From positions 112,279-176,278 of the forward strand of contig JAADVB010000005.1 in NCBI GenBank assembly GCA_023334545.1: a DNA stretch of 64,000 bases, written 5' to 3'. The notes under the pieces were generated by a model that saw only the letters and a list, made by a program, of their open reading frames with translations, ran no database searches and was not told the origin of the DNA. Positions 34,990 to 42,273 of the stretch are shown here, piece by piece (position 1 is the stretch's first letter; every line of letters begins with the position of its first letter). This DNA is from Salisapilia sapeloensis CBS 127946. Its lineage: Eukaryota > Protista > Oomycota. The position numbers and the translations under genes are program-made.

Positions 34990-35288
34990 GCGTATATGAG
35001 GTATGTTACCGTAGATGAAGGCGCTTCTGCAGCGTCGACTCGATTGGAAAATGACCTCTTGCTTCTACTTTGTTCCTTGCCAAACTTCCAGATCTCTCGG
35101 TGATATCAAATCTAGCCATTTTAACAACCGATCAAGATCTTTGACAATTTTTTAAAGTAAAAAGTTGTATGCTTACGAAATGGCTTCTTTTAGAATCCAT
35201 ACTAGATTCTATATATCTTTAGATAGTATGGCTAGTGAAGTGAAAAACTGCCACACCAAACCTTCTGAAGATACGGGAGTGTGGTTTT

Positions 35289-36197
35289 ATGAGACGTTAT
35301 CAGGAGAATAAGTATTGTGGACCAGGAAGTTTCGACGATTTGATCGGAATGGAGGAAGAGGACGAGAGCAAGGCGGCACCTGCGAGTCTCATTGACTCTC
35401 GGAGGCAACAAGCGTCTGTGGAGAACACACAAGAGTCGGCTCGGTACTTGTCTCGTAATCCAGACAGCTCCAATTCGTTTAGTCAAGCCTTTGCTGCACT
35501 TCGACAGACAGAATCGTATCAATCGGAGCCTATAGCTGCTCCAGCCAACGATGCAAACCCTCCATCTTCCTCATCTGGAGCAACGATCTTTGCCAATCGA
35601 GTCCAGACTGGCAATCCAGTCCTTCGCTCCGTGAAAAACGTCCAAGTACAGTTCCGAGACAACCTTATACCAGACTATGTCATGGGTGATGGCAGCCAAA
35701 CGTGCTGTGTGCTCTTCCTCAGCGTCCGTTACCACCTCTTACACACCGACTACCTCCAGCAACGAATCGACCGTATCCTCAAGGAAGACCAGACGACTTA
35801 TCGCACTCGTGTAGTCTTGTGCTTTGTCGATGTGGATGACAACGAAGGACCATTACAAGAAATCAATCGCGTTGCACTGCTCAATCGTTTCACACTGCTC
35901 CTGTCTTGGACATGGCTTGAAGCTGCCAGATATTTAGAGACACTTAAGGTATATGAGCATAAACCAGCAACACTCATCAAGGAGAAAGTCGACAATGAGT
36001 TTCTACCGACCGCGAACGACGTCCTAACTACCGTCCGCTCTGTCAACAAAACGGACGTCGTGACGTTACTTTCGACCTTCAACAATGTCCAGGGCGTCAT
36101 GAATGCATCTATGGAAGAGCTATCGTTATGTCCAGGCATTGGCGTTCGCAAAGTCCAGGACCTACTGCATACATTCCACGAACCATTCAGCAAGTAA
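35289..36197 (+). CDS. ERCC1: DNA excision repair protein ERCC1/Rad10
   Basis: QTGNPVLRSVKNV, PDYVMG, LFLSVRYHLLH, EAARYLETLK, HhH LSLCPGIGVRKV. Confidence 0.95.
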   Translation: MRRYQENKYCGPGSFDDLIGMEEEDESKAAPASLIDSRRQQASVENTQESARYLSRNPDSSNSFSQAFAALRQTESYQSEPIAAPANDANPPSSSSGATIFANRVQTGNPVLRSVKNVQVQFRDNLIPDYVMGDGSQTCCVLFLSVRYHLLHTDYLQQRIDRILKEDQTTYRTRVVLCFVDVDDNEGPLQEINRVALLNRFTLLLSWTWLEAARYLETLKVYEHKPATLIKEKVDNEFLPTANDVLTTVRSVNKTDVVTLLSTFNNVQGVMNASMEELSLCPGIGVRKVQDLLHTFHEPFSK

Positions 36198-36412
36198 AGA
36201 CGCCAAATCAATTTTTATTGCTGATTGTGCCACGCCGAGGCAATAACGCTTCTCGCTCTAACGCTCCTTCTTGGTCCTGCGACAAGCCACACCAGTCAAG
36301 CAATGTACTAACACTGTGGCAATGATTATTCATACGCAAGAGCCAAACAACATATACACATCCATTTCTCTCGTTTGTTCTTGGTTATCACCACAAAAGA
36401 AAGCAAAAGTCC

Positions 36413-37774
36413 TTACACGTTGGGCGTAGGTAGATCAGCGTCCAATTCAGCCTTGAAACCTGCGTCTTCCACTGCTTGCACCAGACTCTCCGGTGTCGCT
36501 TGTCCGGCCGCATACGCACAGCCGTCTTCAAAGTCGACGTACGCTCGCGTGACGCCAGGTGTGCTCTTCAGTGCATTCTCCACTGTCGTTCCGCAGTTGG
36601 CCATGCACATCATGCCTTCCACATGCAGACGGACGGTCGAAGGATCATGGAAGCGCCATGCACCGCGTTCTTTTGACACGTCCTTGTCGAGACTCTTGAA
36701 CAGGACGAAGCCTGCGCCAAAGCCGAGGATCAACGCGATGAAGAGACCAGACTCGTAGATCATGACCACGAGCATGGCAAAGTAGGCAACAGTCATTTGA
36801 ATCATATAGAGCAACGCCAACAGAGCTTTGCTCTGGTACTTGAACGCTTTGTTCGAACGTCGTTTCCGGCGTGCTTCCAATACCTTTTGACGCACTTGTT
36901 CTCGCATACGGACGAGGTATTCGTTGAAAAGGGCGATGAGGAAGCATCCAATGAAACCAAATACGTATTTGAGTTGGGAATCGAGGACCCAAGACTGGAA
37001 GAAGAGCATGACACAACTGCCATTGATCGTCGACTGGAAGCCATTGAACATGACGGAGCCAGCACCGGAGCAAAAGTCACTGTCAGTAGATTCCGTCGTC
37101 GTTGCTGCAGACGTGTCCTCCTTCGAATTGTCCTCCGTCGTAGACTCGGAGGTCTCTGGTTCAAATTGGAATTCAGACGCTTGCGTACTCAGTTTTGTAA
37201 TCTCTTCGGCATCCTTACACGGAGATCCTTCACATATAACTTCATCCACCAAGTATCGAGGTTCTTTTACGACATTGCTCAAGTACTTATCACGCGATTT
37301 ATCGGATCCAAAGTAGATCTTCTGACCTTTTTTCAGACAAATGGAAGAGTATTTGTCTTCCGATATGGGTTCACCTGACACGGGGCATTTGATCCCTTCG
37401 GAACATTTGCCACAACCGTCTTCACAGTCGTATTCTTCCGATCCTTTGTTCACGATAAACTCGGCCATGTTGGCAGCTACGTACGACGTGTCGGTCGATT
37501 TATGGTCATAGTCCGCGAAAGATCGAGGGGCCATGCCACAAGTGTAGATGCGTTGACCGTGGTCCATTTGCACATAGTTTTCGTTGTCATAGCCGGAACT
37601 CATGGTGTTCATGCCACATGCTGGACACCGATACTCGTCGCTCGGGGAAGTGGACCCCATGTCCATATCCATATCCATACTCATATCCATATCCATTTGC
37701 ATAACATGTATGCCGTGCATACCATGGGCCACGACGGACCCAGCGAATAACGCAGCGAGCACCAACGACCTCAT
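36413..37774 (-). CDS. Ctr-family copper transporter with signal peptide, His/Met-rich tract, two YHS/TRASH-like Cys modules and C-terminal HMA domain
   Basis: MxxxM (AMLVVMIY) and GxxxG (GFGAG) in TM2/TM3; pre-TM1 Met in SVMFNGF; HMA LHVEGMMCMANCGTTVENAL...VEDAGF. Confidence 0.9.
   Translation of the reverse strand: MRSLVLAALFAGSVVAHGMHGIHVMQMDMDMSMDMDMDMGSTSPSDEYRCPACGMNTMSSGYDNENYVQMDHGQRIYTCGMAPRSFADYDHKSTDTSYVAANMAEFIVNKGSEEYDCEDGCGKCSEGIKCPVSGEPISEDKYSSICLKKGQKIYFGSDKSRDKYLSNVVKEPRYLVDEVICEGSPCKDAEEITKLSTQASEFQFEPETSESTTEDNSKEDTSAATTTESTDSDFCSGAGSVMFNGFQSTINGSCVMLFFQSWVLDSQLKYVFGFIGCFLIALFNEYLVRMREQVRQKVLEARRKRRSNKAFKYQSKALLALLYMIQMTVAYFAMLVVMIYESGLFIALILGFGAGFVLFKSLDKDVSKERGAWRFHDPSTVRLHVEGMMCMANCGTTVENALKSTPGVTRAYVDFEDGCAYAAGQATPESLVQAVEDAGFKAELDADLPTPNV
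37658..37696 (-). repeat. Imperfect (ATGGAT)n coding microsatellite encoding MDMDMSMDMDMDM
   Basis: Direct reading: atggatatggatatgagtatggatatggatatggacatg on the minus strand. Confidence 0.9.
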
Positions 37775-37986
37775 CCCTACAAGGCAGATCAAGAAATGAC
37801 AGTTCCAAATCTCCATTAGCATCTGCCATCCGAGAAACGGCTATATGACCAAAAAAATACTTTTTATCTAATACAAGAGACTTGATAAAAAGTAGATATT
37901 TAAATGGATCCTGGGTTGTATGGTTGAATTGGAATGTTGACTGGGAATTATACACGATGTCACTATCATTTCTTCTCCGTCGCGAG
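37775..37986. promoter_or_regulatory. Bidirectional promoter between the two Ctr genes
   Basis: TCATTTCTT Inr-like motif on each strand (37791-37799 minus; 37966-37974 plus) and a central 11-bp perfect inverted repeat TACTTTTTATC-N15-GATAAAAAGTA (37858-37894). Confidence 0.65.
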
Positions 37987-38952
37987 ATGGCGGTCTTCCA
38001 TTCGAAATACTTATTTCTACTTGTCGCATGCTTCCTCCTTCTCGTCAATGGAGATGACGTTATTAAGAAAGCGACTTGTCCGATATGTGAGATGGACGTG
38101 AAGCCATACCTGAATGCATCTATCGTGGGCCACCAGCACGTCTACGCCTGTGAGATGGCGGGCCACTTGGACGGCTTGCAGAACAAACCAGAGGCCTATC
38201 TCGGTACTGTCGAGAAAATGAACCCTGCCGACGATGTCGTGTACAAGGATGCAAAGGAGATGGAATGCCCTGTTTGTGGCAAAGGCTTTGACGAGCTCCA
38301 GTACGCTGTGCATTGGAAACCGCTTGGCAATCAAAAGATCTACACTTGCTCCGAAGGACATGCTCACAAAGTCCTCGCAGATCCGGCTGCCTACGTAGCT
38401 GCGAGTGACGCTGGTGAAGGCTTCTGTAACGCTGGATCCAAGGACGCACCCAGAGGATCTGTCATGTTTAATGGTTTCCAGTTTGCTGTCGGCGACAGTG
38501 TCACGTGTGCTCTCCTCCTCTTTCAGCCATGGATCCTATCATCGACAGTCAAGTATGTTTTTGGCATCCTCGGGGTCGTCTTCCTTGCTTCCTGTATCGA
38601 AGGCACAGGATACCTTCGAGATGTTACTCAGCGCCATTTCTACCGAAAGTATAGTCGTATCACGACCTTTGCAGACTACACCGAGATGGTGTCACCTGTC
38701 GAAGACGGATCTGTTTTGAAAGAAATGCAGGTTCGCGTCGTCCAGCAACTACCGCTGTGGTGCAAACTGGTACTAGCGGCACTATACATGGTCAATCTAA
38801 CGATTGCATACTGGCTCATGCTTGTCATTATGACATACGAAGCGGCATTATTCATGGCAGTCATCGTCGGCCTCGGCCTCGGATTCTTCGTCTTTAAAGA
38901 CACGGATGGAGAGAAGATGAGTGGGAACATCGACCCTTGCTGCTCTACATAG
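37987..38952 (+). CDS. Ctr-family copper transporter paralog with signal peptide, two YHS/TRASH-like modules and C-terminal CC motif
   Basis: SVMFNGFQ, LMLVIMTY (MxxxM), GLGLG (GxxxG), terminal DPCCST*; ectodomain CPICEM..VYACE and CPVCG..KIYTCSEGH..DPAAY. Confidence 0.9.
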   Translation: MAVFHSKYLFLLVACFLLLVNGDDVIKKATCPICEMDVKPYLNASIVGHQHVYACEMAGHLDGLQNKPEAYLGTVEKMNPADDVVYKDAKEMECPVCGKGFDELQYAVHWKPLGNQKIYTCSEGHAHKVLADPAAYVAASDAGEGFCNAGSKDAPRGSVMFNGFQFAVGDSVTCALLLFQPWILSSTVKYVFGILGVVFLASCIEGTGYLRDVTQRHFYRKYSRITTFADYTEMVSPVEDGSVLKEMQVRVVQQLPLWCKLVLAALYMVNLTIAYWLMLVIMTYEAALFMAVIVGLGLGFFVFKDTDGEKMSGNIDPCCST

Positions 38953-39149
38953 TGCGTCTAAAGAAATATATGGGAGTTCAATTTTTCTTTTTCTTTTCTT
39001 TGAATAAGTACCATTGCTGTGCCATTGATCCGCAGGATGGACACAAACTTTTTTTCGACATTTTGGTCCTTTGGATCGGTCCTACCTCGTTCTACTCGCT
39101 TTCAAGAAGCTTTTACGATTGATTCTAGTGGCTGTGAATACACTTGATC

Positions 39150-40058
39150 ATGCTGTCTAGTATGTACGGAAGCTATGGCACGAACCAAGCGTTGGATGTG
39201 CCGAAAACTGTAGATTCGAACACTTTTTCCTATGCCGTGGAGGAAGGAGAGTCACTCAAGTCTATTGCATCCAAGTTCTCGACTACAAGGCAACGTCTAC
39301 GTGAACTCAATCCTCACATTGTGCTTCCACCCACAGAGACGCATAAAAATCGTAATCGTCGACTGGAAGCAGGCGACACCTTGGTCATCGACATCGTCGA
39401 CACATCTTCCTTGCCTCCTCCTCCTGACCACATAGACAATGGATGGGGTACGATACACACTGTCACGCCCCACGACACGCTTCCATCCATCGCCAAAAGA
39501 TACAACTTAACAGAACAAGAAATTCGACAAGATAATCGCCATTTCTTTCCCGTAGGGGAACGTGGTCGCCTCGTGCCTGGCGCTCAGCTTCACATTCGCG
39601 CGATCCACAAGTCGGATGATGAGACTGCAGACGCCATAGCTGTGCCAGGTGGGCGATTCACACCGACCGTCAAGTACACCAGTCACGTCGTCCAGCGTGG
39701 CGAAACGTTTGAAAGCATTTGTCAGCAGTATAACTTGACGTTCGCCAAGCTACTGGAGATCAATCGCGGGAGGTATCCGAGTGGTACGATTCAATCCAAC
39801 TTGGCCGTCGGAACGCCTCTCATCGTCCCTGACATCCACTATGTCAAACCAGAAGAAAGCAGGAGTCACGTCTCGGAAGTGAAGCTAACGAAAGAAATTT
39901 ATATCGTCGAGAGTGGTGACACACCCGAGAGTGTCATGGAAGCATTTAACATGACTTATGAAGAGCTACGAGAGTGGAATCGAGCCTACTTTCCAAAAGG
40001 TTATCGTGGACGTATATCTCCAGGTAACAAACTCGTTGTTCGAAGACGTGAAACGTAA
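39150..40058 (+). CDS. Four-LysM-domain protein, no signal peptide
   Basis: YAVEEGESLKSIASKF..LRELNP; HTVTPHDTLPSIAKRY..N; HVVQRGETFESICQQY..LLEIN; YIVESGDTPESV..LREWN. Confidence 0.88.
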   Translation: MLSSMYGSYGTNQALDVPKTVDSNTFSYAVEEGESLKSIASKFSTTRQRLRELNPHIVLPPTETHKNRNRRLEAGDTLVIDIVDTSSLPPPPDHIDNGWGTIHTVTPHDTLPSIAKRYNLTEQEIRQDNRHFFPVGERGRLVPGAQLHIRAIHKSDDETADAIAVPGGRFTPTVKYTSHVVQRGETFESICQQYNLTFAKLLEINRGRYPSGTIQSNLAVGTPLIVPDIHYVKPEESRSHVSEVKLTKEIYIVESGDTPESVMEAFNMTYEELREWNRAYFPKGYRGRISPGNKLVVRRRET

Positions 40059-40092
40059 TAAAAGTGGTAATGTTCTTGGTTAAATACGTCTT

Positions 40093-42273
40093 CTACACTT
40101 GCAATCCATCTTCATCTAGCTCTTCCAGTTCATCAAAAATATCATCCAGAGCTTCCAACCTTTTCTTAGCTTTATATTTGCGCCAAGTCCTTTGAAGACT
40201 GATGAAGAGAGATAGGAAGAAGACGCTCACGATTGCCAATAGACCTATATGACTACCAAGCCATTCAGTCATGTCGTCTAGAAGCTGGATTTCAGTCGCA
40301 AAGTCCTCCACTTTTTGTGGGATGTACAGGTCATGCATAAAGACAGAGGTCTGCTGTTTACTGTCATACGCTGCCTCTTGAACGACTGGCAAAGCATTCT
40401 CTTTCATGTGATTATCGAAGGAAGTGTCCTTCTTCAGTGGTTCCATCCCGCCTTGGAATTTTATCTCAAGTTCTGGACGATGGAGAATGTCACGCCATGC
40501 TGCAGCCATGACTTCCTGTTGTTCTGTGTTGGTGCGAAAGATGAAGTAATCAATCACACGCTGCTTTTCGTATCGAACTTCCTCTGTCTTTCGTCTGTAC
40601 CAACCTTGTAGATCCTTTATGGCAACGTCCGACGCCCAATACTCTTCCACCATACTCGACACTTTCTCCGCGTCCACTTCCTCTTTCTTCCACGCCATAG
40701 AAACAAGATCGTACATGTCTTGACACGTTTGATGCCAGTACGAAAGACTAGAGGAGAGGAGAGACAGCATAAAGGACCATACTTCCCGAAAGACAAGACT
40801 ACAAGACACAACAACGTCCTGTACACTTGCCATGACGAAAGATAGACAGCTCATCAACGTAGAGTATATGTCTACTTCAGCAAGACCTGCTACGATAGAC
40901 TGTATACTCAACACTATAGTGTCGTAAATGGTGCTAGCCCACTCGACTGCATCTTCAGGAAAGTCCCATGTGAGGACAGAAGCACTGAGGAAGGTATATA
41001 AGCGGACAGCTTCATCCCCGATGTACGCTAGACTGGTGTGGACGAATGGCGTGTAGATTGCAGCAATGATGACCAAGACACCAAACGCCATTGCTGATGC
41101 GATGCTGCATGCACTACGCCACCAACGAGAGTTCCATGATTGATACGCTTCTACTGCCATCATCTCCTGAAGTGCATCCAAACGTACGATTTCATCTGAC
41201 GTTTCAAGCGTCTCTTCAATATCTTCCAATGCTCTCGAGATATCCTGTCTAACCTCATCGTCGTCTTCATTTTCTTGAATGAGGTCACTAGAGTCTAGTG
41301 GATCATCATCTACTGCATATGACGTTTCGTCCGTAGAGCAATTGTCATCCTCCACAGTCTCCATCTCTTCCATCCGTGGTTCAGACGAATGCTCAGATGG
41401 TATCTCTTCCACCTCTTCTCTCCACTCTTGAACTGATGCTTCTTCATCCTCATTGCTATTATCCTCTTGTCCGTCTTCTTCCTCTTGTTCCGTGGTCTGT
41501 TCTACGTCTTCTACTTTCTCGCATTCACTATCGCTTGTGTGTTCCACTGGTGATTCAAAAGAGTACTCTGGGAGTATCTCTTCCTCTTCTTCTTCCTGAT
41601 CCATCCATTCTTGCATTGGTGATTCGTCATTTTCGTTGCTATTCCCGTTCTCTTCGTATCGTTCTTTGGGCTTATTTAGGTCTTGAGCTTCTTCATCTCG
41701 ACTGCGATTTGTCTGGTCTTCCTTTTGATTATTCATTTTCGCTGTCGAATGGAGACTATAGTCGATTGCGAGATCACTAAGCGTCAATCGACCTCCTTCT
41801 GCACTACTTTCGCCATGTACTGACTTGCCAACTTCACTTGCTACTAGTCTCGGAGGTTTTTCGACCCTACGACTACGTTGCAGCCTCTTGAATTCATCAA
41901 AGCGAGGCCGACGTTGAGTCTGTTTCTCCACTGGCGGAGGTGGTGGTGGCAACTCGTTCGTCCTTTTGTGTGCTGGTGATGGCCTTCGACGAGGTGCAGA
42001 GTGATATGCAGACGTCCTTGATGGCGATGGGATCTTACTCTGTCTATCCGATGACGTCGGCCTCCCATGTGCATTTTGCTGGACGGCCATGGCCTTCATC
42101 GTCGGTGGACGCATATTCGCACGTCGTTGCTCGAGCTGCTTTAACTGCGCCAACCGTCGTTCTTTATCAGACTTAGTTGTCCTCGGATCCTCGAGTTCCT
42201 GTCGGAGTTTCGAAATACGCTGTTGCTCTCGCTCTTGTCGCCAATGAAAGAGCTGCTGCTCCTTGTCGGACAT
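40093..42273 (-). CDS. Hypothetical membrane protein: basic/coiled N-terminus, long acidic tract, several TM segments
   Basis: Intronless ORF of about 726 aa; hydrophobic segments AMAFGVLVIIAAIY and IGLLAIVSVFFLSLFISL. Confidence 0.7.
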   Translation of the reverse strand: MSDKEQQLFHWRQEREQQRISKLRQELEDPRTTKSDKERRLAQLKQLEQRRANMRPPTMKAMAVQQNAHGRPTSSDRQSKIPSPSRTSAYHSAPRRRPSPAHKRTNELPPPPPPVEKQTQRRPRFDEFKRLQRSRRVEKPPRLVASEVGKSVHGESSAEGGRLTLSDLAIDYSLHSTAKMNNQKEDQTNRSRDEEAQDLNKPKERYEENGNSNENDESPMQEWMDQEEEEEEILPEYSFESPVEHTSDSECEKVEDVEQTTEQEEEDGQEDNSNEDEEASVQEWREEVEEIPSEHSSEPRMEEMETVEDDNCSTDETSYAVDDDPLDSSDLIQENEDDDEVRQDISRALEDIEETLETSDEIVRLDALQEMMAVEAYQSWNSRWWRSACSIASAMAFGVLVIIAAIYTPFVHTSLAYIGDEAVRLYTFLSASVLTWDFPEDAVEWASTIYDTIVLSIQSIVAGLAEVDIYSTLMSCLSFVMASVQDVVVSCSLVFREVWSFMLSLLSSSLSYWHQTCQDMYDLVSMAWKKEEVDAEKVSSMVEEYWASDVAIKDLQGWYRRKTEEVRYEKQRVIDYFIFRTNTEQQEVMAAAWRDILHRPELEIKFQGGMEPLKKDTSFDNHMKENALPVVQEAAYDSKQQTSVFMHDLYIPQKVEDFATEIQLLDDMTEWLGSHIGLLAIVSVFFLSLFISLQRTWRKYKAKKRLEALDDIFDELEELDEDGLQV

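What the first reader, a model, noticed from the sequence alone, without database searches (positions are those of the whole stretch)
36413..38952. Head-to-head pair of elaborated Ctr copper importers: candidate self-contained copper-capture module
Seen: two intronless paralogs on opposite strands, 212 bp apart. They share GSVMFNGFQ..C..L.FQ.W.L.S..KY.FG, the Ctr MxxxM and GxxxG motifs, signal peptides and duplicated Cys ectodomain modules. Their tails differ: an HMA domain in one, a CC motif in the other. Established: Ctr proteins are trimers, and S. pombe Ctr4/Ctr5 form an obligate heteromer. Inference: these are co-regulated subunits of a heterotrimeric importer that combines extracellular capture (Mets plus YHS-like modules), a pore, a C-terminal Cys gate and a built-in chaperone. 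I know no description of this combined architecture, but I could not search for one.
Basis: partly seen in the sequence, partly recalled or inferred. Interest (0 to 1): 0.85.

Follow-up and report, generated by a model that had tools for sequence, protein, structure and literature searches.

The report
Conserved back-to-back copper importer gene pair
An oomycete (water mould) keeps two related copper-uptake channel genes back to back on a shared 212-base promoter region, one carrying a built-in copper-chaperone-like domain. The pairing has survived throughout oomycete evolution, but whether the two proteins assemble into one channel is untested.

Summary
Gene A (36413-37774, minus strand, 453 aa) and gene B (37987-38952, plus strand, 321 aa) are intronless, divergent Ctr-family genes 212 bp apart.

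- **Domains.** Both pass Pfam Ctr. A also passes Pfam HMA, and its model superposes on solved HMA domains.
- **Transcription.** RNA contigs show two separate transcripts that start within about 10 nt of the proposed ATGs. The spacer is left uncovered.
- **Ectodomains.** They are homologous two-module Cys domains (hhalign 93.9%) with weak but consistent TRASH/YHS-type matches.
- **A's HMA.** It carries an unusual CX3C motif in place of CxxC in nearly every full-length relative listed.
- **B's tail.** It ends in a near-invariant DPCCS[T/S].

New here: A and B form separate clades (100/100) that each span Saprolegniales, Albugo and Peronosporales. The divergent pair is present in 10 of 11 loci examined, despite changed flanks, an inversion and two independent duplications of the whole pair. 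That indicates selection on the pair as a unit.

Co-regulation is likely. The heterotrimer idea is plausible (about 40%) but untested.

The architecture is not undescribed. Strenkert et al. 2023 (bioRxiv) already note C-terminal HMA domains and this unannotated N-terminal domain, citing an Albugo CTR, in a 'protist cluster' of CTRs. Earlier first-stage notes of this scan touch sub-parts of this same stretch.

Verdict: a new variant of a known kind, of moderate interest.

The parts
36413..37774 (-). Gene A: Ctr copper transporter with an N-terminal Cys ectodomain and a C-terminal HMA domain (453 aa, intronless).
   Evidence: ORF. Pfam Ctr and HMA. RNA contigs end at 37729-37777 with no joints. 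Orthologues 49-60% identical in Peronosporales, Pythiales and Albugo, and 39-43% in Saprolegniales.
37721..37774 (-). A residues 1-18: signal-peptide-like hydrophobic N-terminus.
   Evidence: Hydropathy segment 4-22. No dedicated predictor was run.
37655..37726 (-). A residues 17-40: His/Met-rich stretch HGMHGIHVMQMDMDMSMDMDMDMG (Mets-type motif), with low model confidence.
   Evidence: Sequence. pLDDT below 50 for residues 1-44. Length varies among orthologues.
37160..37642 (-). A residues 45-205: two-module Cys ectodomain. Module 1 is CPxCxM...GQRIYTCxM; module 2 is CxxxCxxC...(D/C)PVSG...GQKIYFxS; a C..C.D segment follows. The fold is TRASH/YHS-like.
   Evidence: Invariant Cys, Met, Gly and Gln columns. 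AF2 pLDDT 92.7. Foldseek matches to eL24/Rlp24 and to YHS/TRASH-named AFDB clusters. Sub-threshold Pfam YHS in relatives.
37079..37159 (-). A residues 206-232: Ser/Thr/Glu-rich low-confidence linker between the ectodomain and the membrane part.
   Evidence: pLDDT below 50 for 213-262. The region is variable in alignment A1.
36692..37078 (-). A residues 233-361: Ctr core. It holds FCSGxGSVMFNGFQ, TM1, TM2 with MLVVM (MxxxM, 36761-36775) and TM3 with GFGAG (GxxxG, 36710-36724).
   Evidence: Pfam Ctr. Three long helices 268-370. Invariant M334, M338, G351 and G353. phmmer hit to salmon Ctr1 6m97, E 3.9e-7.
36440..36637 (-). A residues 380-445: cytosolic HMA domain with GMMCMANCG. This is a CX3C metal motif (36593-36607) in place of the canonical CxxC.
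   Evidence: Pfam HMA. Beta-alpha-beta-beta-alpha-beta secondary structure at 381-444. Foldseek TM 0.82-0.89 and rmsd 1.0-1.2 A to HMA7, MerP, PacS and TTHA1718. A one-residue insertion appears in alignments to solved HMAs. The motif is conserved in nearly every full-length A relative.
37775..37986 (.). 212-bp spacer between the divergent start codons (38% G+C): the presumed bidirectional promoter.
   Evidence: Essentially uncovered by RNA contigs, while both flanking genes are covered. The same divergent layout is seen in 10 of 11 oomycete loci. No GTAC or GCTG cores.
37987..38952 (+). Gene B: Ctr copper transporter with an N-terminal two-module Cys ectodomain and a short CC tail (321 aa, intronless here).
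   Evidence: ORF. Pfam Ctr E 4.3e-20. RNA contigs span 37976/37983-38985 without joints. Orthologues 36-59% identical.
37987..38052 (+). B residues 1-22: signal-peptide-like N-terminus.
   Evidence: Hydropathy. No dedicated predictor was run.
38053..38436 (+). B residues 23-150: two TRASH-like modules. Module 1 is CPxCxM-x-GxQxxYxCEMAGH; module 2 is CPVC-x-GxQKIYxCSxxHA. The pattern is C-x2-C-x20-23-C-x3-4-H.
   Evidence: Invariant columns in alignment A3. Profile-profile match to the A ectodomain, 93.9%, E 1.6e-7.
38422..38898 (+). B residues 146-304: Ctr core with MLVIM (38818-38832) and GLGLG (38869-38883). The TM1-TM2 cytosolic loop is longer than in A.
   Evidence: Pfam Ctr 176-303. BLASTP against A. 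Motif positions.
38899..38949 (+). B residues 305-321: acidic cytosolic tail ending in DPCCST (38932-38949).
   Evidence: The ending G[SN].DPCCS[TS] is present in 61 of the 63 B-family hits listed; the two exceptions look like truncated models.

Best explanation
**What it is.** This is an ancient gene pair for Cu(I) uptake, conserved across oomycetes. Two paralogous Ctr-family channel subunits are transcribed divergently from a shared promoter region of about 200 bp.

**Common ancestry.** Both descend from one ancestral gene that already encoded a signal peptide, a two-module TRASH/YHS-like Cys/Met/His ectodomain and the three-helix Ctr pore.

**How the two copies differ.**
- A carries a His/Met-rich N-terminal stretch, a remodelled second module and a tethered cytosolic HMA domain with a CX3C site.
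- B carries a short acidic tail ending in DPCCST.

**Proposed mechanism.** Steps 1 to 3 are inferred from family knowledge.
1. Extracellular Cu(I) is collected by the Met/His stretch and the Cys/Met/His modules.
2. It passes through the MxxxM selectivity rings of a Ctr trimer.
3. It is received on the cytosolic side by thiolates. In B these are the CC tail, analogous to the HCH or Cys tails of other Ctr proteins. In A they are the tethered HMA, analogous to a soluble Atx1/CopZ-type chaperone.

**Selection on the pair.** The pair is maintained as a unit, so shared regulation is very likely. Balanced dosage is also likely.

**Assembly.** I judge mixed A/B trimers about as likely (about 40%) as separate A3 and B3 trimers working in one pathway or in two membranes (about 40%). 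I cannot decide between them here.

**Shown here:** the gene models and their transcription, the domains and motifs, the homology of the ectodomains, the age of the duplication, and conservation of the divergent arrangement.

**Inferred:** copper as the substrate, the membrane topology, the hand-off route, copper-dependent regulation, and assembly.
For: - **Family membership.** Pfam Ctr in both and HMA in A, above the curated cut-offs. MxxxM and GxxxG are invariant. The model has three helices followed by an HMA fold. There is a sequence match to solved Ctr1 and to many solved HMA domains.
- **Ectodomains.** High-confidence model. A and B ectodomains are homologous. TRASH/eL24 and YHS-type matches; eL24 is a single TRASH domain and YHS is its expansion (PMC4626032).
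- **Transcription.** Two separate transcripts, an uncovered spacer and no introns. Contig depths for A were 108/372/120/83 and for B 189/802/216/141 in runs X1-X4, against 82/37/45/57 for the LysM neighbour.
- **Age of the duplication.** The A and B clades are each supported 100/100, and each contains Saprolegniales, Albugo and Peronosporales/Pythiales.
- **Conserved arrangement.** The divergent A/B layout is seen in P. infestans, Pythium oligandrum, S. diclina (two pairs), P. sojae second pair, Aphanomyces stellatus, Achlya (two pairs), Albugo candida and Lagenidium.
- **Unit behaviour.** Flanks differ between orders. They are swapped between Saprolegnia and Achlya, which means the pair was inverted as a unit.
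- **Co-duplication.** The sub-duplications are mirrored in both clades.
- **Conserved tails.** CX3C in A and DPCCS[T/S] in B.
Against: - No experiment or condition-resolved data show copper transport, copper regulation or localisation for any oomycete member.
- In Peronosporales and Pythiales the whole neighbourhood (LysM, B, A, Rad10, TPS) is syntenic, so conservation there is not specific to the pair.
- The expression co-variation rests on two samples and on assembler depth. A's contig is also merged with the convergent Rad10 gene.
- The extracellular Cys residues may be disulfide-bonded rather than metal ligands.
- The CX3C spacing is non-canonical for HMA, so metal binding is unproven.
- A candidate shared 7-mer in the spacers did not hold up in an independent set.
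Confidence: 0.75

Rival explanations
1. **Obligate or preferred heterotrimer.** A and B co-assemble into mixed trimers. B's CC tails form the pore-exit site and pass Cu(I) to the HMA tethered on A. Neither works well alone, as with S. pombe Ctr4/Ctr5.
For: - The pair is retained as a divergent unit since before the oomycete crown split, including after two independent duplications in which both daughter loci kept both genes. This pattern is expected under dosage balance of complex subunits.
- The features are complementary: a Mets stretch and HMA only in A, and the CC tail only in B.
- TM2-TM3 is the most similar part of the two proteins.
- Ctr heteromers exist in fission yeast (PMC2915924). 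The rice COPT paper PMC3103425 also turned up in the heteromer search but was not read.
- The B:A depth ratio was 1.7-2.2 in all four runs (a weak measure).
Against: - Assembly was not tested; no multimer prediction was available.
- Both proteins keep all the motifs a homotrimer needs.
- Lagenidium has two full A copies and a partial third beside one B. Achlya has a third B with no adjacent A.
- Most characterised Ctr paralogue sets work as separate homotrimers (my own knowledge of yeast Ctr1/Ctr3; for Chlamydomonas CTR1/CTR2 see the abstract of the preprint).
Confidence: 0.4
2. **Two independent homotrimeric importers that merely share a promoter.** For example, they could have different affinities or sit in different membranes (plasma membrane and vacuole or endosome). 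They would be co-induced when copper is scarce.
For: - Both have complete pore motifs.
- Copy numbers are not always 1:1.
- Precedent: separate homotrimers in budding yeast (my own knowledge), and distinct roles for Chlamydomonas CTR1 and CTR2 (preprint abstract).
- Fission yeast co-regulates the plasma-membrane and vacuolar Ctr genes through one factor (my own knowledge).
Against: - Co-regulation alone does not require physical adjacency. It does not easily explain why both genes were retained in both daughter loci after two independent pair duplications.
- The tails are reciprocally specialised.
Confidence: 0.4
3. **A is not primarily an importer.** It would be a copper sensor or 'transceptor', or a regulator of B. 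Its HMA would report cytosolic copper and gate or down-regulate the channel.
For: - The HMA domain is non-canonical (CX3C) but strictly conserved, together with an invariant WR in its linker.
- Human CTR2 is a precedent for a Ctr paralogue that modulates CTR1 rather than importing copper (my own knowledge).
Against: - A keeps the invariant MxxxM, GxxxG and pre-TM1 Met.
- It also has the richest extracellular capture region, which fits transport.
Confidence: 0.08
4. **The adjacency is a historical accident.** It would be a tandem inverted duplication that has simply not been broken, with no selection on the arrangement.
For: - The two genes are paralogues, so they were born adjacent.
- Synteny in Peronosporales is generally high.
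Against: - Flanking genes differ completely between Saprolegniales, the Phytophthora second pair and the Peronosporales first pair, yet the pair and its orientation persist.
- The pair was inverted as a unit between Saprolegnia and Achlya.
- The layout holds in 10 of 11 loci.
Confidence: 0.07

Closest known systems
'Protist-cluster' CTR proteins described by Strenkert et al. 2023 (bioRxiv 10.1101/2023.10.19.563170). This covers the Albugo candida CTR with an unannotated N-terminal domain, the stand-alone relative Cre05.g236039, and CTRs with C-terminal HMA domains.
   Same: - The same protein family and the same add-on domains. The oomycete orthologues of A and B, including the Albugo ones, are direct homologues.
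- Stand-alone secreted copies of the ectodomain also exist in oomycetes.
- The module is fused to Ctr in Fonticula, Syssomonas and Diphylleia.
   Different: - That paper mentions the fusions in passing, in a supplementary figure, and calls the N-terminal domain unannotated.
- In the passages I read it does not describe the following: the A/B paralogue split, the conserved divergent gene pair, the TRASH/YHS-type fold of the domain, the CX3C variant, or the DPCCST tail.
S. pombe Ctr4/Ctr5 heteromeric copper transporter (PMC2915924).
   Same: Two Ctr-family subunits with different extracellular and cytosolic metal motifs that are needed together. This is the functional model for a mixed trimer.
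   Different: - Co-assembly is not shown for A and B.
- Ctr4 and Ctr5 have no TRASH-like ectodomain and no HMA domain.
- From my own knowledge, the fission-yeast genes are not adjacent.
Chlamydomonas CTRA-CTR transporters CTR1/CTR2 and the soluble CTR3 (same preprint).
   Same: - Ctr pores with large Cys-rich ectodomains built from repeated modules.
- A secreted paralogue consisting of the ectodomain alone.
   Different: - The authors state that the CTRA domain is unrelated to the Albugo-type domain.
- CTR1 and CTR2 have distinct roles by reverse genetics and carry no HMA domain.
TRASH/YHS metal-binding modules (ribosomal eL24, YHS domains of Cu-ATPases and of the M. phlei adenylyl cyclase; PMC4626032).
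   Same: - A small module with the ligand pattern (C/D)-x2-C...C-x3-(C/H).
- The best solved-structure matches of the model are eL24/Rlp24.
- YHS/TRASH-named AFDB clusters match, and there are sub-threshold Pfam YHS hits in relatives.
   Different: - The matches are statistically weak: Foldseek E 0.25-1, and Pfam below the gathering score.
- The location is extracellular.
- A's second module has lost two of the canonical ligand positions (Ser/Thr and Ala/Gly in place of Cys).
- The fourth ligand is His or Met.
Soluble Atx1/CopZ-type copper chaperones and the N-terminal HMA domains of Cu-ATPases.
   Same: - A ferredoxin-like beta-alpha-beta-beta-alpha-beta fold.
- A GMxC...C site at the beta1-alpha1 junction.
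- TM 0.82-0.89 to solved examples and E 2.5e-11 to T. thermophilus TTHA1718.
   Different: - Here the domain is tethered to the C-terminus of a Ctr channel.
- There is one extra residue between the two Cys (C-M-x-N-C), conserved in nearly every A relative listed and in one metagenomic protist Ctr-HMA protein.

Membership tests
Ctr/COPT/SLC31 copper transporter family (Pfam PF04145) | Profile match above the curated threshold. | tested here: met
   A scores 52.3 bits and B 73.2 bits against a cut-off of 25.3. phmmer hit to the salmon Ctr1 crystal construct 6m97, E 3.9e-7.
Ctr/COPT/SLC31 copper transporter family (Pfam PF04145) | Three transmembrane helices, with the N-terminus outside and the C-terminus inside. 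| tested here: inconclusive
   Three long helices at 268-370 in the A model, and hydropathy peaks in both proteins. Orientation is inferred from the signal peptide and from family knowledge; it was not tested.
Ctr/COPT/SLC31 copper transporter family (Pfam PF04145) | MxxxM in TM2 and GxxxG in TM3. | tested here: met
   A has MLVVM 334-338 and GFGAG 351-355. B has MLVIM 278-282 and GLGLG 295-299. M334, M338, G351 and G353 are invariant in 38 A-type sequences.
Ctr/COPT/SLC31 copper transporter family (Pfam PF04145) | Trimeric assembly and Cu(I) transport. | not testable with these tools
   No multimer prediction or functional assay was available.
HMA domain (Pfam PF00403) | Profile match and a beta-alpha-beta-beta-alpha-beta ferredoxin-like fold. 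| tested here: met
   29.9 bits against a cut-off of 24.8. Secondary-structure order in the model. Foldseek TM 0.82-0.89 and rmsd 1.0-1.2 A to HMA7, MerP, PacS, TTHA1718 and CopZ.
HMA domain (Pfam PF00403) | Canonical MxCxxC metal-binding motif. | tested here: not met
   The motif is GMMCMANC, with three residues between the Cys. Alignments to solved HMA domains place a one-residue gap in the targets. The CX3C form is conserved across nearly all A relatives. The fold is HMA, but the site is a variant whose metal binding is untested.
TRASH / YHS metal-binding domain (Pfam clan TRASH, PF04945 YHS) | Profile match above threshold. | tested here: not met
   No YHS hit at E<=1 for the window's A or B. 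Among relatives, 16 of 42 give sub-threshold hits (best E 0.0015; 16.7 bits against a cut-off of 30.3 in P0068).
TRASH / YHS metal-binding domain (Pfam clan TRASH, PF04945 YHS) | TRASH-type fold (as in eL24). | tested here: inconclusive
   The best solved-structure matches are eL24/Rlp24 over about 40 residues (probability up to 0.95, but E 0.25-1). AFDB clusters named YHS or TRASH match at E 1e-3 to 0.3, including one with TM 0.52/0.57.
TRASH / YHS metal-binding domain (Pfam clan TRASH, PF04945 YHS) | Ligand pattern (C/D)-x2-C-x19-22-C-x3-C. | tested here: inconclusive
   B modules: C-x2-C-x20-C-x4-H and C-x2-C-x23-C-x3-H. A module 1: C-x2-C-x25-C-x-M. A module 2 keeps only the first position ((D/C)PVSG...YFxS). 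The pattern is close but not canonical.
Heteromeric Ctr complex of the Ctr4/Ctr5 type | Physical co-assembly and mutual dependence of two Ctr paralogues. | not testable with these tools
   Only indirect support: the conserved divergent pairing, co-duplication and complementary tails. Counter-examples in copy number.

The most novel reading that the evidence does not exclude
A and B form an obligate mixed Ctr trimer with a built-in relay. Extracellular TRASH-like modules and a Mets stretch capture Cu(I). The B subunits' invariant CC tails receive it at the pore exit and pass it to a CX3C HMA chaperone domain tethered on the A subunit. The head-to-head gene arrangement has been kept across crown oomycete evolution to hold the subunits in fixed stoichiometry. 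This would be the first Ctr channel with an integrated chaperone, and a genomically hard-wired heteromer.
Probability: 0.3. Interest if true: 0.7.

Novelty: new variant of a known kind. Interest (0 to 1): 0.5.

Why it matters
- **Copper as a control agent.** From general knowledge, copper salts are the oldest agents used against oomycete diseases of crops, and one search lists studies of copper sulfate against the fish pathogen Saprolegnia. I found no paper on how oomycetes take up copper. This pair is the obvious candidate entry route, and it is conserved from Saprolegnia to Phytophthora.
- **A question in copper cell biology.** A channel with a permanently tethered chaperone-type domain gives a natural system for asking how Cu(I) leaves the Ctr pore and reaches its first cytosolic acceptor.
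- **A testable prediction.** The conserved divergent arrangement, duplicated as a unit at least twice, predicts subunit co-dependence or dosage balance.
- **Domain annotation.** The ectodomain gives a fold assignment (TRASH/YHS-like tandem modules) to a domain that the literature calls unannotated. That domain also occurs as a stand-alone secreted protein in oomycetes and, per Strenkert et al., as a copper-regulon target in Chlamydomonas.

Tried and rejected
1. **Known copper-response elements in the spacer.** There is no GTAC core (CRR1/SPL7 type) and no GCTG core (Mac1/Cuf1/Ace1 type) in the window's 212 bp.
2. **De novo shared motif.** GTCAACA occurs in 6 of the first 7 spacers, and 6 of 300 shuffles reach that. 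It occurs in only 1 of 4 independent spacers fetched afterwards. I rejected it as a conserved element; at best it is lineage-restricted.
3. **Profile search of the ectodomain against PDB sequences.** This gave only C2H2 zinc-finger look-alikes at E 0.003-0.05. I regard these as pattern mimicry (Y-x-C-x2-C...G-x-K-x-Y-x-C), not homology.
4. **Literature on the oomycete genes.** I looked for PITG_13717/13718, PHYSODRAFT_285994 and SDRG_09832, and checked one of the two Saprolegnia copper-sulfate transcriptome papers (PMC9498376). Nothing was found.
5. **Literature on a CXXXC HMA variant.** Nothing in the library.
6. **A first tree.** It missed nearly all B sequences because of a coverage filter and included a very long branch (P0082). 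I discarded it and rebuilt it with per-family extraction.
7. **Other copies in the window.** None beyond A and B.
8. **A prenylation reading of the ...CCST end.** I considered it and set it aside. It is not a canonical CaaX box, and the protein is an integral membrane protein whose family uses C-terminal Cys/His for copper. It was not tested.

Full report
**1. What is in the sequence**

ORF listing shows a 469-codon ORF at 36413-37822 on the minus strand. It also shows an ORF at 37882-38952 on the plus strand.

They are 212 bp apart and divergent.

Contigs of four runs were laid on 35200-40100. The tool lists the runs as 'RNA?', and they come from two samples of one study.
- One contig covers A and merges with the convergent Rad10/ERCC1-like gene downstream. 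It ends at 37729-37777.
- A separate contig covers B from 37976/37983 (38044 in one run) to 38914-38985.
- There are no joints and no base differences.
- The spacer is essentially uncovered.

So these behave as RNA libraries.

**2. Domains**

Pfam places both proteins in the Ctr family, well above the curated cut-off. It also finds an HMA domain at A residues 383-441.

A and B are paralogues: 33% identity over the Ctr core, E 6e-27. The pore signatures are present and invariant in 38 A-type sequences:
- A: MLVVM 334-338 and GFGAG 351-355.
- B: MLVIM 278-282 and GLGLG 295-299.

An AlphaFold2 model of full-length A gives these parts:

| Residues | Feature |
|---|---|
| 45-205 | Confident ectodomain |
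| 213-262 | Low-confidence Ser/Thr-rich linker |
| 268-370 | Three long helices |
| 381-444 | Beta-alpha-beta-beta-alpha-beta domain |

The last domain superposes on solved HMA domains (HMA7, MerP, PacS, TTHA1718, CopZ) at TM 0.82-0.89 and rmsd 1.0-1.2 A.

Sequence alignments to solved HMA domains all need a one-residue gap in the target between the two cysteines. The site is GM-M-C-M-A-N-C, a CX3C rather than the canonical CxxC.

This variant, GM[STMK]C[MKLA]xNCG, is found in nearly every A relative with a complete C-terminus. The same motif occurs in one metagenomic protist protein that has a different Cys/Met ectodomain, a Ctr core and an HMA domain (P0082).

B has no HMA. Its 17-residue acidic tail ends in DPCCST. 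The ending G[SN].DPCCS[TS] is present in 61 of the 63 listed B-type hits; the two exceptions look like truncated models.

**3. The ectodomains**

*Conserved residues in A.* Alignment of A-type proteins shows invariant Cys, Met, Gly and Gln positions arranged in two modules:
- Module 1: C-P-x-C-x-M ... G-Q-R-I-Y-T-C-x-M.
- Module 2: C-x3-C-x2-C ... (D/C)-P-V-S-G ... G-Q-K-I-Y-F-x-S, followed by C ... C-x-D.

*Conserved residues in B.* B has two modules:
- C-P-x-C-x-M ... G-x-Q-x-x-Y-x-C-E-M-A-G-H.
- C-P-V-C ... G-x-Q-K-I-Y-x-C-S-x-x-H-A.

*Homology.* A profile-profile comparison shows the two ectodomains are homologous over about 100 columns (93.9%, E 1.6e-7). The ancestral gene therefore already had the ectodomain.

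*Fold.* The A ectodomain models with high confidence (pLDDT 92.7, pTM 0.88).
- Against solved structures the best matches are ribosomal eL24 and Rlp24 over about 40 residues. Probability reaches 0.95, but E is 0.25-1.
- eL24 is a single TRASH domain, and YHS is regarded as an expansion of TRASH (PMC4626032).
- Against AlphaFold DB clusters, the hits after the oomycete relatives are a Fonticula alba 'copper transport protein', a 'YHS domain-containing' fragment (TM 0.52/0.57) and a run of weak YHS/TRASH-named entries.
- Pfam YHS is not detected in the window's protein. It appears below threshold in 16 of 42 relatives (best E 0.0015).

I therefore accept 'TRASH/YHS-like' as the best fold description, but not as demonstrated family membership. 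In A's second module two of the canonical ligand positions are Ser/Thr and Ala/Gly, so that module is probably not a classical metal site.

*Taxonomic spread.* The family is small. A profile search of 1.84 billion representative proteins finds 52 hits at E<=0.001. The module is fused to Ctr cores in Fonticula, Syssomonas and Diphylleia. It also occurs as stand-alone proteins. These include an oomycete family of about 250-300 aa with a C-terminal hydrophobic tail that looks like a GPI-anchor signal (not tested).

**4. The pair as an evolutionary unit**

This is the new part.

*Locus tags.* The hit lists already show neighbouring locus tags in many species.

*Loci examined.* I fetched 11 loci, and ten hold a divergent A/B pair:
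- P. infestans, Pythium oligandrum and S. diclina pair 1.
- The P. sojae second pair, Aphanomyces stellatus and Achlya pair 1.
- Albugo candida, Lagenidium giganteum and Achlya pair 2.
- S. diclina pair 2, where the unannotated 443-aa divergent neighbour is A-like by tblastn.

The exception is a long-branch third B in Achlya.

*Flanking genes.* In Peronosporales, Pythiales and Albugo the neighbourhood is partly syntenic with the window (LysM, B, A, Rad10, TPS), so conservation there is not specific to the pair. The Saprolegniales pairs and the Phytophthora second pair have entirely different flanks. Between Saprolegnia and Achlya the flanks are swapped, which means the pair was inverted as a unit.

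*Tree.* A maximum-likelihood tree of the Ctr cores (52 sequences, unrooted) separates A from B at 100/100. Each side contains Saprolegniales, Albugo and Peronosporales/Pythiales. The duplication therefore predates the split of these orders.

*Mirrored sub-duplications.* Two A and two B sub-clades occur in Saprolegniales, and two each in Phytophthora. The physical partners fall in corresponding sub-clades:

| A gene | B partner |
|---|---|
| SDRG_09832 | SDRG_09831 |
| Achlya 07431 | B on the same contig |
| Achlya 03231 | B on the same contig |
| Aphanomyces stellatus 18290 | 18291 |
| PHYSODRAFT_313872 | PHYSODRAFT_329750 |

The pair was therefore duplicated as a unit at least twice, and both genes were kept each time.

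*Copy number exceptions.* Lagenidium has two full A copies and a partial third beside a single B, merged into one 1150-aa gene model.

**5. Regulation**

The spacer is AT-rich (38% G+C). It lacks GTAC and GCTG cores.

A shared 7-mer, GTCAACA, looked promising in the first seven spacers but failed in an independent set.

Contig depths:

| Contig | X1 | X2 | X3 | X4 |
|---|---|---|---|---|
| A (merged with Rad10) | 108 | 372 | 120 | 83 |
| B | 189 | 802 | 216 | 141 |
| LysM neighbour | 82 | 37 | 45 | 57 |

A and B both rise three- to five-fold in the second sample (run X2) while the LysM neighbour falls. This fits co-regulation. It rests on two samples and on assembler depth, which the tool itself warns is a poor measure.

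Copper responsiveness could not be examined.

**6. How it most likely works**

From family knowledge, Ctr proteins are trimeric Cu(I) channels. They have extracellular Met/His/Cys capture motifs, MxxxM rings in the pore and Cys/His tails at the cytosolic exit. HMA domains are Cu(I) chaperone or acceptor modules.

On that basis the pair encodes the oomycete high-affinity copper entry system. A provides a tethered acceptor domain and B a thiolate tail.

The conserved divergent arrangement and the co-duplication argue for shared regulation and probably for dosage balance.

Two assembly models remain open:
- The two proteins form mixed trimers, as in the Ctr4/Ctr5 precedent (PMC2915924).
- They form separate trimers in one pathway or in different membranes.

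I rate each at about 40%. Minor alternatives are a sensor or regulator role for A, and accidental adjacency.

**7. Comparison with what is known**

Strenkert et al. 2023 (bioRxiv 10.1101/2023.10.19.563170) report a 'protist cluster' of CTRs. In it they note:
- C-terminal HMA domains.
- An unannotated N-terminal domain, illustrated by an Albugo candida CTR.
- The same domain as a stand-alone secreted protein; the Chlamydomonas one, Cre05.g236039, is a CRR1 target.

Public databases already label the orthologues 'Copper transport protein' with Ctr and HMA domains. So the domain architecture is documented, if only in passing.

I found no description of the following: the A/B split, its age, the conserved head-to-head pair and its unit-wise duplication, the homology and fold type of the two ectodomains, the CX3C HMA variant, or the invariant DPCCST tail. 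I also found no experimental paper on any oomycete member in the searchable library.

First-stage notes of this scan already cover sub-parts of this same stretch: the HMA CX3C, the Cys modules, the spacer and the Mets microsatellite. These are other readings of the same DNA, not independent evidence.

**8. Verdict**

This is a new variant of a known kind, with moderate interest (0.5). That would rise to about 0.7 if the mixed-trimer relay were shown.

Noticed in passing
Proteins P0065-P0080 (oomycete homologues of A residues about 40-205); alignment A1.: There is an oomycete family of stand-alone secreted copies of the A-type ectodomain (about 250-300 aa). Each has its own Met/Asp/Ser-rich N-terminal stretch and a C-terminal hydrophobic tail that looks like a GPI-anchor signal. 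In Peronospora destructor and P. oleae the gene lies on the same contig as the A/B pair.
   Followed up: partly
L008:1-4336 (Lagenidium giganteum) and protein P0149.: Two full A copies and a partial third lie head-to-tail next to a single B. They are merged into one 1150-aa gene model (ecto-Ctr-HMA, partial Ctr-HMA, ecto-Ctr-HMA).
   Followed up: partly
L003, L007, L008 (B genes) compared with window 37987-38952.: In Pythium oligandrum, Albugo candida and Lagenidium the B coding sequence is split into three tblastn pieces at the same two positions (after about residue 68 and about residue 137 of the window's B). This implies two introns. The window's B is colinear with its RNA, so the introns were lost in this lineage or gained in the others.
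   Followed up: partly
Window 35289-36197 (+) and 36413-37774 (-).: The Rad10/ERCC1-like gene and gene A are convergent, with only 215 bp between their stop codons. In all four runs one RNA contig spans both, so their 3' ends probably overlap or abut.
   Followed up: no
Window 37655-37726.: A's Met-rich stretch MDMDMSMDMDMDM is encoded by a near-perfect ATGGAC-type hexanucleotide repeat. The length and composition of this stretch vary widely among orthologues, so it may be prone to slippage.
   Followed up: no
L001:8833-10483 (P. infestans).: In P. infestans an Nramp metal transporter gene sits two genes from the Ctr pair, between Rad10 and TPS. It is absent at that position in the window and in Pythium oligandrum.
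   Followed up: no
Protein P0082 (JGI metagenome, 467 aa).: An unidentified eukaryote encodes a Ctr with a different ectodomain, rich in CxxMxxM...C-type motifs. Its C-terminal HMA carries the very same GMMCMANCGTTV CX3C site. The CX3C HMA-Ctr fusion therefore extends beyond the named oomycetes in these hit lists and is combined with another kind of ectodomain.
   Followed up: partly
Window 37373-37387 (A residues 130-134).: The window's A has CPVSG where about 90% of relatives have DPVSG. The first ligand position of the YHS-like module is Cys here and Asp elsewhere; both residues are known at that position in TRASH/YHS domains.
   Followed up: no
Spacers of L001-L003, L005, L006, L008 and window 37935-37941.: The 7-mer GTCAACA (often GTCAACAAT) occurs in 7 of 11 A/B spacers. 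It is not statistically secure after an independent test.
   Followed up: yes
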